A DNA stretch of 63,965 nucleotides, the filler included, from Octopus bimaculoides (taxonomy: Eukaryota): the NCBI RefSeq assembly GCF_001194135.2. It is 5 parts of 5 records of this genome, joined end to end, with 100 filler letters (N's around TTAATTAATTAA, not from the genome) between each part and the next. Parts side by side here need not be neighbours in the genome. Positions count along the whole stretch, not along the records: positions 52,997 to 62,660 come from NC_068987.1; 4 more parts are not named here. The stretch is one strand, 5' to 3'. Below the pieces are notes generated by a model. That model saw nothing but the letters and a program-made list of their open reading frames with translations, was not told the DNA's origin and did no database searches. This document shows, piece by piece, positions 55,396 through 55,932 of this stretch (position 1 is its first letter; the number at the start of each line of letters is the position of its first letter). The position numbers were made by a program, and so were the translations under genes.

Positions 55396-55932
55396 TCATT
55401 ATTCAGTTTATTTCAAGAATTCTTGACAATAGAGAAAGAACCGGTTTCTAACCTAGATCCATCGTTCCTTCATTGGAATTTCAACATCAACAACAGAGCA
55501 TGCCTGTCTGTCTATCTGTCTGTCTGTATGTATGTATGTATGTATGCATGTATGTTCAGATTTGTATGTTTTATGTATGTATTCCCATGCACATAGTTGC
55601 GTATCTAGACATGCACTTATATATTTAAACGATAAACTTCTGGAAAGTTTTACAGATTCTTACAGTTCCAGTGATGCATTGGATCTGTAGTCTTAGAATT
55701 AGCTTTCTGGTTTTGAGAAACCTAATTCCTCATGATTATTTAGGCAGTGTGTTACATATCCCAAGGCCCCAATAATTACAGGTATATACCTGAAATTCTA
55801 ATCTGGATAGAGTAACTGCAGATTTCTCAATAGTTCAGCATAGGTGTTCTCTTTTCCACTGATCTTCAGCTTCATGTTAACATCCACTGGGCAGCCTATT
55901 TCCACAACAGTGCAGTTTCTCTTGTCTAACCC
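55396..55932 (-). mobile_element. RLE non-LTR retrotransposon 3' fragment (family 3) inserted in (CATA)n
   Basis: Minus translation (one frameshift near the 5' end) ...[56 protein letters not shown]...LQIQCITGTVRICKTFQKFIV*. The 3'UTR ends cttgaaataaactgaataatga. (TATG)n on both flanks. Confidence 0.82.

What the first reader, a model, noticed from the sequence alone, without database searches (positions are those of the whole stretch)
55396..55932. Putative (CATA)n-specific RLE retrotransposon that carries its own target repeat
Seen in sequence: six copies of one family (1981-2239, 2486-2700, 22473-22569, 23147-23263, 28850-29188, 55396-55932). The two longest encode the C-terminus of a restriction-like endonuclease. 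All five copies with a sequenced 3' end stop at ...gaataatga. For 1981, 2486 and 55396 this runs directly into catac; for 23147 into (CATA)n after a short TA; the 22473 flank is degenerate. The 5' truncation points of the two long copies also lie in (TATG)n. The 3'UTR itself contains a (CATA)n tract. Established knowledge: R4-clade Dong elements target (TAA)n, and RLE elements are often sequence-specific. Inference: this lineage has switched specificity to a tetranucleotide microsatellite and seeds new target sites with each insertion, which could help explain the abundance of (CATA)n in this DNA. I do not recall a described (CATA)n-targeting RLE family, but I cannot exclude one.
Basis: partly seen in the sequence, partly recalled or inferred. 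Interest (0 to 1): 0.8.

Follow-up and report, generated by a model that had tools for sequence, protein, structure and literature searches.

The report
Microsatellite-targeting LINE fragment in octopus DNA
This is a broken, front-truncated copy of a jumping gene (an R2-like LINE with a restriction-like endonuclease) sitting inside a CATA tetranucleotide repeat; related copies elsewhere show the same placement, so the lineage most likely targets that repeat, a new target motif for a known kind of element.

Summary
On the minus strand, 55932 to 55396 is a 537-bp, 5'-truncated, decayed LINE copy. It has about 102 codons of the C-terminal half of a restriction-like endonuclease (RLE), with one in-frame stop and one frameshift. 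A 229-nt 3'UTR follows, with an internal CATA/CAGA tract and the ending ...gaataatga. (CATA)n abuts both ends in sense orientation.

Intact relatives carry RT, a CCHC knuckle and an RLE, with no N-terminal zinc fingers. A model of the closest intact relative superposes on the R2 endonuclease domain (TM 0.72-0.74).

Four more cephalopod-type copies with a readable 3' end show CATA-type sequence at or within 4 nt of it; one has only a single CATA unit. In an unrelated invertebrate assembly, diverged subfamilies lie head-to-tail, separated by perfect (CATA)25-35 arrays, always in one orientation. Another relative is flanked on both sides by (CTTA)n.

The best reading is a microsatellite-specific RLE LINE lineage that integrates by target-primed reverse transcription. 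Open reviews list no (CATA)n-specific RLE family. Repbase and Dfam could not be checked.

The parts
55960..56029 (-). (CCAT)n block of the compound microsatellite upstream of the element (5' flank, read on the minus strand)
   Evidence: TRF reports period 4, 24 copies, 96% matches for 55933-56029; sequence read. The O. vulgaris copy in L001 has the same (CCAT)n-(CATA)3 arrangement at its 5' end.
55933..55959 (-). (CATA)6-7 directly abutting the 5' truncation point, in sense orientation
   Evidence...ccatacatacatacatacatacatacat|gggttagacaag.
55396..55932 (-). 5'-truncated, decayed copy of an RLE-type LINE (about 12% of a roughly 4.2-kb full-length element)
   Evidence: DNA identity is 79% to O. 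vulgaris L001 10150-10578 and 72-73% to Logan copies L003, L017 and L019. Protein homology links it to full-length RT-CCHC-RLE proteins.
55625..55931 (-). ORF remnant: the C-terminal half of the restriction-like endonuclease domain (from just after the RPD motif) plus the C-terminal helices. It has an in-frame TAG at 55798-55800, a 7-bp deletion/frameshift near 55706, and the stop TAA at 55625-55627.
   Evidence: Translation; coordinates; alignment to other copies. Identity is 61-64% to P0001/P0161 and 83% to O. vulgaris P0002. The profile matches the R2 CCHC and RLE C-terminus. The AlphaFold model of P0161 matches the R2 RLE domain at TM 0.72-0.74.
55583..55624 (-). Proximal 3'UTR (atatataagtgcatgtctagatacgcaactatgtgcatggga...)
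   Evidence: Conserved in window, L001, L017 and L019.
55504..55582 (-). Internal CATA-rich tract followed by (CAGA)n within the 3'UTR, expanded in this copy
   Evidence: TRF rows 55504-55543 (CTGT) and 55517-55582 (TGTA). A homologous CATA-rich tract is present in L001, L017 and L019 and in the read-through peptide of P0043. No such tract was seen in sister-subfamily copies L021 and L022.
55396..55503 (-). Conserved 3'-terminal module ending ...gaaataaactgaataatga. It is presumably the part recognised for priming of reverse transcription.
   Evidence: Shared with L001 and L017, and with another subfamily in L021. No covarying secondary structure was detected.
55315..55395 (-). Imperfect (CATA)~20 array directly abutting the 3' end, in sense orientation (target remnant and/or tail)
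   Evidence: TRF reports period 4, 20.5 copies, 83% matches; junction read.

Best explanation
**What it is.** The feature is a dead, 5'-truncated insertion of a LINE of the R2 supergroup. These elements have one ORF with a reverse transcriptase, a CCHC knuckle and a C-terminal PD-(D/E)xK restriction-like endonuclease, and no N-terminal zinc fingers. It is most likely what cephalopod repeat annotations call 'Dong-R4'.

**Proposed mechanism (inferred, not shown).**
1. The element's protein recognises the (CATA)n.(TATG)n duplex.
2. It nicks the TATG strand at a fixed phase of the repeat.
3. It uses the freed 3'-OH to prime reverse transcription from the conserved 3'-terminal module of its own RNA (target-primed reverse transcription).
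4. Premature termination or template switching produces 5'-truncated copies whose 5' ends also join (CATA)n.

Because the repeat lies at both ends in one orientation, arrays are hit repeatedly and become strings of head-to-tail copies.

**What is shown.**
- The anatomy of the copy.
- RLE homology and fold.
- (CATA)n at both junctions, in sense orientation, in several independent copies and diverged subfamilies from two unrelated genomes.
- A sister family flanked on both sides by (CTTA)n.

**What is inferred.**
- The nick site.
- Which protein part reads the repeat.
- Whether part of each 3' array is synthesised at insertion.
- The origin of the family-specific CATA tract in the 3'UTR. A plausible route is read-through from a master copy into its downstream array and a truncated neighbour.
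For: **Element type.**
- The ORF remnant matches proteins whose full-length relatives (P0153 1135 aa, P0158, P0159 1161 aa, P0049, P0104) have RVT_1, a CCHC knuckle (CRLC..ED..H....C) and an RPD...E.S.P.D.N...K motif.
- These relatives have no C2H2 finger in the N-terminus and no Pfam match other than RVT_1, so no APE-type endonuclease family was hit.
- Their best PDB sequence matches are R2 proteins.
- The C-terminal profile aligns colinearly with the R2Tg CCHC and RLE (E 0.003).
- The AlphaFold model (pLDDT 88) matches R2 RLE domains at TM 0.72-0.74 and probability 1.0, followed by other PD-(D/E)xK nucleases.

**Window copy.** (CATA)n abuts both ends in sense orientation. A random placement shows this 0.5% of the time.

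**Other cephalopod-type copies, 3' ends.**
- L017...aaatctcga|catacatacgtaca.
- L022...aagagatg|(CATA) at least 5 units, to the contig end.
- L021...gataaaata|(CA)6cataccc.

**5' junctions.**
- L001 (O. vulgaris) has (CCAT)n(CATA)3 at a different truncation point.
- Fragment ORFs P0002, P0020, P0028, P0123, P0079 and P0266 read HTYI repeats, the sense-strand (CATA)n translation, just upstream of the truncation. None of about 260 proteins reads the antisense YVCM.

**Unrelated long-read assembly ERZ25878582.**
- L015 holds seven RLE C-termini on one strand.
- Copies A, B and C (C full length) are separated by perfect (CATA)25, (CATA)32 and (CATA)35 arrays.
- Nine CATA arrays lie in sense orientation and none in antisense.
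- 3' ends with different sequences all run into CATA...gatcatta|...aactaataa|...ccttcccag|...gcctaccaa|...acagtcga|.
- L016 and L020 show ...tcattagaa|(CATA)5 and ...gaagtcta|(CATA)3 followed by the 5'UTR of a full-length copy.
- By my count, 9 of 12 C-termini in these loci have a CATA array of at least 3 units 130-320 bp downstream.

**A different repeat in a relative.** The family of P0168 (about 51% aa identity to the window ORF; L014) is a 4.3-kb near-full-length copy flanked on both sides by (CTTA)n, about 54 and 29 units. Microsatellite embedding is therefore a lineage trait with variable motif.

**Precedent.** RLE LINEs are mostly target-specific, including for microsatellites (PMC4640811, PMC7998251, PMC3812793).
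Against: - The O. vulgaris copy L001 ends gaataatga|ctgacatatatat, so one of the 3' junctions seen has no array, only a single CATA unit 4 nt away.
- Only five cephalopod-type 3' ends and two DNA-level 5' ends could be examined. Nothing here is a genome-wide count.
- In the ERZ25878582 loci most 5'-flanking arrays are also the 3' flank of an upstream retroelement. There the data cannot separate a pre-existing target from a tail made at insertion. The long, perfect arrays (100-140 bp) look young.
- L016 and L020, and copies F and G of L015, are partly duplicates and not independent events.
- Coral (Tara Pacific) relatives end in ordinary sequence, so not all members of the wider group are microsatellite-associated.
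- No biochemical evidence exists.
- The clade is unresolved.
Confidence: 0.7

Rival explanations
1. Tail only. The element inserts without sequence preference, and (CATA)n is a 3' tail synthesised by its reverse transcriptase (reiterative copying of a terminal CAUA), as many LINEs and SINEs carry microsatellite tails. The 5'-flanking arrays would then be tails of older neighbouring copies or coincidences.
For: - Arrays between tandem copies in L015 are long and perfect, (CATA)25-35, which suggests recent synthesis.
- In ERZ25878582 nearly every 5'-flanking array follows another retroelement's 3' end.
- Every subfamily, whatever its terminal sequence, runs into CATA in the same phase.
Against: - The window copy and the L001 copy have (CATA)n at their 5' truncation points with no upstream element. 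The upstream sequence is (CCAT)n and then unrelated DNA.
- L001 lacks a tail altogether, so a tail is not obligatory.
- Non-specific insertion would not produce strings of 5-7 copies in one orientation, all separated by the repeat, within 20 kb.
- The (CTTA)n-flanked full-length relative has the repeat on both sides, with differing variant patterns in the two arrays.
Confidence: 0.13
2. Passive association. The element is not linked to the repeat mechanistically. Octopus DNA is rich in (CATA)n, arrays arise or expand next to AT-rich element ends, or elements survive preferentially in microsatellite-rich, low-recombination DNA.
For: - The piece contains element-free (TATG)n arrays (61223-61476, 62253-62279, 56044-56074) and many other microsatellites.
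- The internal 3'UTR tract has clearly expanded in this copy relative to L001, showing local microsatellite growth.
Against: - Both ends abut the repeat directly, to within 0-1 nt, at 0.5% chance in this piece.
- The same holds in independent copies, in diverged subfamilies and in an unrelated genome, always in sense orientation: 0 antisense among peptide-encoded junctions and among 17 arrays in L015, L016 and L020.
Confidence: 0.05
3. Break capture. (CATA)n.(TATG)n tracts are fragile or form non-B DNA, and the element's cDNA is captured at spontaneous breaks there (endonuclease-independent or microhomology-primed insertion). The RLE would not recognise the repeat.
For: - RNA read-through into downstream CAUA repeats could anneal to broken TATG ends.
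- An unrelated retroelement 3' end (the 85-bp TTGCTGAATGGG...GGTCC sequence) also sits in (CATA)n in ERZ25878582. That could mean the site, not the enzyme, is special.
Against: - The junction phase is constant (|CATA) across subfamilies.
- A sister family sits in a different repeat, (CTTA)n, as expected for enzyme-encoded specificity.
- The other retroelement may simply be a non-autonomous passenger of these LINEs.
- RLE LINEs are typically sequence-specific (PMC4640811).
Confidence: 0.05

Closest known systems
Dong (R4 clade RLE LINE; Bombyx mori, Anopheles, the snail Biomphalaria, ostracods, cnidarians)
   Same: - Single-ORF RT-CCHC-RLE element without N-terminal zinc fingers.
- Embedded in a microsatellite in fixed orientation on both sides.
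- About 4 kb long.
- 'Dong-R4' is the abundant RLE LINE class annotated in octopus genomes (PMC8967140, PMC13282606).
   Different: [quoted passage not shown] Here the flanks are (CATA)n, or (CTTA)n in one relative, and no (TAA)n flank was seen.
- RT-phylogenetic placement was not tested.
- No HDV-like ribozyme was found by Rfam in the full-length relatives.
- The N-terminal Myb-like domain reported for R4/Dong was not detectable with Pfam.
Waldo (R1 clade, APE-type LINE; Anopheles, earwig)
   Same: It targets ACAY repeats, which include (ACAT)n = (CATA)n (PMC3812793). This is the nearest known target motif.
   Different: Waldo uses an N-terminal apurinic/apyrimidinic-type endonuclease and belongs to a different LINE group. 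Here the endonuclease is a C-terminal PD-(D/E)xK RLE, and Pfam matched only RVT_1 in the full-length relatives.
Togen ((TG)n-specific, NeSL-related) and microsatellite-specific HERO families of the leech (Repbase Reports 2014, cited in PMC4640811)
   Same: They are RLE-type LINEs with microsatellite target specificity outside the R4 clade. This shows that such specificity arises repeatedly.
   Different: Togen targets a dinucleotide repeat in fish. The HERO motifs are not given in the text available to me. NeSL-type elements carry N-terminal zinc fingers, which are absent here. Clade relationship was not tested.
R2 (28S rDNA-specific RLE LINE; solved structures 8GH6, 9DOU, 9NL2/3)
   Same: Best sequence and fold match for the RT and for the RLE domain. 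It is the mechanistic model for target-primed reverse transcription by an RLE LINE.
   Different: R2 targets one site in 28S rDNA and has N-terminal zinc-finger/Myb domains. RLE-domain identity is only 12-17%.

Membership tests
RLE-type non-LTR retrotransposons (R2 supergroup) | Reverse transcriptase domain of the non-LTR type | tested here: met
   Absent from the truncated window copy. Present in full-length relatives that share its C-terminal domain: RVT_1 E 1e-20 to 9e-37. Best PDB hits are R2 RT, E 3e-28.
RLE-type non-LTR retrotransposons (R2 supergroup) | CCHC knuckle between RT and endonuclease | tested here: met
   C-x2-C-x8-H-x4-C (CRLCRNAVEDTCHIVAGC and similar) found in P0153, P0158, P0159, P0049 and P0104. 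It aligns with the R2Tg CCHC. It lies upstream of the window copy's truncation point.
RLE-type non-LTR retrotransposons (R2 supergroup) | C-terminal PD-(D/E)xK restriction-like endonuclease fold | tested here: met
   The motif RPD...E(V/I)SCP.D.N...K..EK..Y is present in relatives. The window retains everything from just after RPD. The model of P0161 (64% identical to the window ORF; pLDDT 88) matches R2 RLE domains at TM 0.72-0.74 and probability 1.0.
RLE-type non-LTR retrotransposons (R2 supergroup) | No APE-type endonuclease | tested here: met
   Pfam scans of full-length relatives returned only RVT_1, or RVT_1 plus zf-RVT.
R4/Dong clade | RT groups with R4, Dong and Rex6 in a phylogeny | not testable with these tools
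   No Repbase, Dfam or GenBank reference sequences for R4, Dong, Rex6, HERO or NeSL could be obtained. There is only indirect support. Octopus RLE LINEs are overwhelmingly labelled Dong-R4: 1129 recent copies and 4.73 Mb, about 4.2 kb each (PMC13282606). That matches the 4.2-4.3 kb full-length relatives.
R4/Dong clade | No N-terminal zinc fingers; divergent Myb/SANT-like N-terminal domain (PMC7998251) | tested here: inconclusive
   No C2H2 motif in the N-terminal 400 aa of five full-length relatives. A conserved W/Y-rich N-terminal motif (..ECY...P..GY..R...LW...HP...) is visible. Pfam gave no Myb/SANT hit at E up to 10.
R4/Dong clade | Target is (TAA)n (Dong) or 28S rDNA (R4) | tested here: not met
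   Flanks are (CATA)n in the window, L017, L022, L015, L016 and L020, and (CTTA)n in L014. No (TAA)n array flanks any copy.
R4/Dong clade | HDV-like self-cleaving ribozyme at the 5' end (PMC3774820) | tested here: inconclusive
   An Rfam scan at E up to 1 of L015, L016 and L001, which include full-length relatives, found no ribozyme family. Divergent ribozymes can escape Rfam, and the window copy lacks its 5' end.
Waldo (R1 clade, ACAY-specific) | APE-type endonuclease and R1-clade RT | tested here: not met
   The endonuclease is a C-terminal RLE. Pfam matched only RVT_1 in the full-length relatives.
Microsatellite-specific LINE (functional class) | The same repeat at both 5' and 3' junctions, in fixed orientation, in independent copies including 5'-truncated ones | tested here: met
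   Window. L015 copies A, B and C, plus L020. L014 with (CTTA)n. Sense-only HTYI peptides at truncation points. Exception: the L001 3' end. The sample is small and not genome-wide.

The most novel reading that the evidence does not exclude
An old, widespread lineage of RLE LINEs in marine invertebrates, including cephalopods and at least one unrelated host, has repeatedly re-programmed its specificity among tetranucleotide microsatellites: (CATA)n, (CTTA)n, and perhaps (TAA)n in Dong. It maintains its own niche. Each insertion splits an array and adds fresh repeat units, and one octopus family has even fixed a target-like tract inside its 3'UTR. Arrays would thereby grow into head-to-tail element clusters that also host non-autonomous passengers.
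Probability: 0.3. Interest if true: 0.65.

Novelty: new variant of a known kind. Interest (0 to 1): 0.5.

Why it matters
Site-specific RLE LINEs of the R2 type are the best-understood model of target-primed reverse transcription and are being adapted for programmable gene insertion. A set of closely related elements that differ in which short repeat they enter, (CATA)n versus (CTTA)n versus Dong's (TAA)n, would be a natural experiment. It could show which protein part reads the target and how specificity is re-programmed.

For cephalopod genomics, it would explain part of the link between a major LINE class ('Dong-R4') and tetranucleotide microsatellites. It would also flag a source of assembly breaks and of false 'microsatellite families'. 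The finding adds a motif to a known class and does not reveal a new mechanism, so interest is moderate.

Tried and rejected
- **Pfam on the 101-aa remnant.** Nothing meaningful. Identification needed homologues.
- **First word-indexed homology search.** Only 3 hits. Octopus copies are too decayed to be in protein databases, so genome-wide sampling through proteins was impossible.
- **Pfam on N-termini of full-length relatives, for Myb/SANT.** No hit.
- **Rfam search for an HDV-like 5' ribozyme, and for any RNA family in the piece.** Only sub-threshold microsatellite 'miRNA' hits.
- **Consensus structure of the 3'-terminal module.** Weak fold and no covariation.
- **Coral (Tara Pacific) relatives.** Two distinct flanks, neither a microsatellite. 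They are uninformative for the octopus family.
- **Idea that the 108-nt terminal module is a foreign, separately inserted element downstream of the 'real' end at the internal CATA tract.** Rejected. Sister-subfamily copies L021 and L022 have the module directly after the stop codon, so the module is ancestral and the CATA tract is the later addition.
- **Supplementary files of two papers, searched for TE libraries or reference alignments.** None usable.
- **Literature searches for an (ACAT)n/(CATA)n-specific RLE LINE.** None found in open full text. This is not proof of absence from Repbase or Dfam.
- **Neighbour-joining tree of the C-terminal domain.** It places (CATA)n-associated families in two groups, with the (CTTA)n family nested among the cephalopod-like ones. 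It uses about 130 aa with no bootstrap support, so I treat it only as a hint.
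Full report
**Scope**

Only the piece 52997-62660 of the window is genomic sequence I could read. 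The piece is eukaryotic, microsatellite-rich and contains assembly gaps. The best named protein match is a hypothetical protein of Octopus vulgaris (P0002), and another relative is an O. bimaculoides RefSeq protein (P0019 = XP_014788340.1). The DNA is therefore octopod.

**Observation**

Read on the minus strand, the sequence runs in this order:
- a (CCAT)n block (56029-55960);
- (CATA)6-7 (55959-55933);
- the element (55932-55396);
- an imperfect (CATA)~20 array (55395-55315);
- unrelated sequence.

The element begins gggttagacaag and ends gaaataaactgaataatga, directly followed by catacacacatacatgc. TRF confirms the arrays.

A placement test gives a chance estimate. Only 21 of 4,108 possible positions (0.5%) for a 537-bp interval in the piece have same-orientation arrays at both ends. 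I did not list these positions; I expect them to be the real one and its immediate neighbours.

**Coding remnant**

One frame reads [73 protein letters not shown]. After a frameshift it continues RKLILRLQIQCITGTVRICKTFQKFIV*. The defects and landmarks are:
- an in-frame TAG at 55798-55800;
- a 7-bp deletion near 55706, relative to the O. vulgaris copy;
- the stop codon at 55625-55627.

Pfam does not recognise the fragment. An exhaustive HMMER search seeded with the close relative P0001 found 1,693 relatives.

Full-length relatives of 1,085-1,161 aa share one architecture:
- a non-LTR RT (RVT_1);
- a C-x2-C-x8-H-x4-C knuckle;
- the motif HNRPDI..W......C..(V/I)E(V/I)SCP.D.N...K..EK..Y;
- no N-terminal C2H2 fingers;
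- no Pfam match other than RVT_1, so no APE family was hit.

R2 proteins are the best PDB sequence matches. A profile of the C-terminal domain aligns colinearly with the CCHC and endonuclease C-terminus of R2Tg. An AlphaFold model of P0161 (64% identical to the window remnant, pLDDT 88) superposes on the RLE domain of four R2 structures. TM is 0.72-0.74 and rmsd about 3.2 A, ahead of other PD-(D/E)xK nucleases.

The window copy starts just after the RPD motif. It therefore encodes only the C-terminal half of the endonuclease, about 102 of roughly 1,135 codons.

**The family**

Four further copies of the same family were recovered:
- O. vulgaris chromosome OX597824.1 (L001, 79% identity);
- three Logan contigs from cephalopod-type sequencing runs (L003, L017/L018, L019; 72-73% identity).

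Their alignment shows a shared layout: ORF tail, about 45 nt, a CATA-rich tract, and a conserved terminal module of about 108 nt. The internal tract is present in all four copies that reach it, so it was in the master copy. In the window it has expanded and acquired a (CAGA)n run.

The sister-subfamily copies seen (L021, L022) have the terminal module directly after the stop codon, without the tract. The tract is therefore a later acquisition of this family. I first suspected the terminal module was a separate insertion, and this result rules that out.

**Junctions in cephalopod-type copies**

| Copy | 3' junction |
|---|---|
| Window | ...aataatga\|(CATA)~20 |
| L017 | ...aaatctcga\|catacatacgtaca |
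| L022 | ...aagagatg\|(CATA) at least 5 units, then contig end |
| L021 | ...gataaaata\|(CA)6cataccc |
| L001 | ...aataatga\|ctgacatatatat (no array) |

For 5' ends, the window and L001 are truncated at different points, and both join (CATA)n preceded by (CCAT)n.

ORFs called on truncated copies read into the 5' flank, which gives a further test. Sense-strand (CATA)n translates as HTYI repeats and antisense as YVCM. Among about 260 retrieved relatives, P0002, P0020, P0028, P0123, P0079 and P0266 carry HTYI-type peptides immediately upstream of the truncation point. None carries YVCM.

**Relatives in an unrelated genome**

P0020, P0028 and P0123 lie on Mb-scale contigs of ENA assembly ERZ25878582. 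That host shares no repeats with octopus at the DNA level.

In the 20-kb locus L015:
- seven RLE C-termini lie on one strand;
- copy A (716-2307), copy B (2436-4442) and full-length copy C (from 4583) are separated by perfect (CATA)25, (CATA)32 and (CATA)35 arrays;
- nine CATA arrays are in sense orientation and none antisense;
- different subfamilies, with different terminal sequences, all run straight into CATA in the same phase.

L016 and L020 show two further arrangements. One is ...tcattagaa|(CATA)5. The other is a copy end, then (CATA)3, then the 5'UTR of a full-length copy.

An unrelated retroelement 3' end (TTGCTGAATGGG...GGTCC) is likewise followed by (CATA)n. Where it is 5'-truncated it is also preceded by (CATA)n. 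It may be a non-autonomous passenger.

Some of these arrangements are duplicates, not independent events: L016 with L020, and L015 copies F and G.

**A relative in a different repeat**

The P0168 family is about 51% identical to the window ORF and comes from ENA assembly ERZ25878469. In L014 it is a 4.3-kb near-full-length copy flanked on both sides by (CTTA)n, about 54 and 29 units. Coral relatives from Tara Pacific metagenomes end in ordinary sequence.

A crude tree of the C-terminal domain puts (CATA)n-associated families in two groups and the (CTTA)n family next to the cephalopod ones. It carries no bootstrap support.

**Interpretation**

The simplest account is a lineage of microsatellite-specific RLE LINEs that integrate by target-primed reverse transcription, as R2 and Dong do. 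The repeat at both junctions, the fixed orientation and phase, the repeated hits on one array, and a sister family in another repeat all fit enzyme-encoded target choice.

A pure '3' tail' model explains the long perfect arrays between tandem copies. It does not explain 5'-truncated copies joined to (CATA)n with no upstream element (window, L001), nor a copy without any tail (L001). The two ideas are compatible: elements may both target the repeat and extend it. Passive association and break capture are less likely, for the reasons given under the rival explanations.

The following are not shown:
- the nick site;
- the recognition domain;
- addition of repeats at insertion;
- any role for the internal 3'UTR tract;
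- any contribution to (CATA)n abundance.

The same piece has element-free (TATG)n arrays.

**Comparison with known families**

Architecture places the element in the R2 supergroup. Within it, the absence of N-terminal zinc fingers is consistent with R4/Dong. So are the roughly 4.2-kb length and the fact that 'Dong-R4' is the dominant RLE LINE class in octopus annotations (PMC8967140; PMC13282606 reports 1,129 recent copies totalling 4.73 Mb).

I could not test this placement by RT phylogeny. Dong's defining target, (TAA)n, reported also for molluscs (PMC7998251, PMC3812793), is not met. The 2013 review of microsatellite-targeting LINEs lists Waldo (ACAY), Mino (AC), Kibi (TC), Koshi (TTC) and Dong (TAA) (PMC3812793). 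Later work adds Togen (TG) and some leech HERO families (PMC4640811).

Waldo shares the motif but is an APE-type R1-clade element. I found no description of a (CATA)n- or (CTTA)n-specific RLE LINE in searchable full text. Repbase and Dfam could not be consulted.

**Verdict**

It is a new variant of a known kind: a microsatellite-specific RLE LINE with a new target motif, and with hints of motif switching within the lineage. Interest is moderate (0.5).

Noticed in passing
L014:6824-11447 (ENA ERZ25878469 ctg70225): A near-full-length relative (P0168 family, 4.3 kb) is flanked on both sides by (CTTA)n arrays of about 54 and 29 units. This is a different tetranucleotide repeat from the octopus family's (CATA)n.
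   Followed up: partly
L015:616-16477 (ENA ERZ25878582 ctg95810): Within 20 kb, seven RLE-LINE C-termini lie head-to-tail on one strand, separated by perfect (CATA)25-35 arrays. Copies F and G, with identical flanks at 15185 and 16466, look like a 1.28-kb local duplication and not two separate insertions.
   Followed up: partly
L015:9994-10078, 15569-15651, 16850-16932; L016:10022-10104, 10684-10766; L020:10655-10730: The roughly 85-bp 3' end of another retroelement (TTGCTGAATGGGTTG...GGTCC) is always followed by (CATA)n. Where it is 5'-truncated it is also preceded by (CATA)n. It may be a non-autonomous passenger of the (CATA)n-specific LINEs.
   Followed up: partly
window 56511-56935: A tRNA-like SINE copy (about 56706-56905, plus strand) sits between (TAC)38-(TAT/ATT)27 and (ATT)9 arrays. 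Other copies of the SINE lie at 53537-53660 and 54385-54452 (minus strand, the second cut by a gap). L001 3429-3946 shows SINE-like similarity with (TTA)n arrays. This may be a second retroelement linked to a microsatellite, here the complement of Dong's (TAA)n.
   Followed up: partly
window 62428-62657: A mariner-like miniature element has 35-nt terminal inverted repeats (62428-62462 and 62623-62657, 89% complementary). By eye, the sequence between them looks like a remnant of a transposase C-terminus.
   Followed up: partly
window 60238-60319: (AC)n and (GT)n runs face each other across a short (ATCT)/(TA) spacer, giving a long hairpin-capable inverted microsatellite. It and the (TATG)n arrays give sub-threshold hits to repeat-derived miRNA models (mir-3149, mir-297).
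   Followed up: no
window 55933-56029 and L001:10060-10148: Both octopus copies with a visible 5' junction join the same compound array, (CCAT)n followed by (CATA)n. These are either a common compound microsatellite type in octopus or something about the preferred site.
   Followed up: no
L021:520-960 (Logan SRR3401912): A sister-subfamily copy carries an insertion of about 385 bp of unrelated sequence between the end of its ORF and its 3'-terminal module.
   Followed up: no
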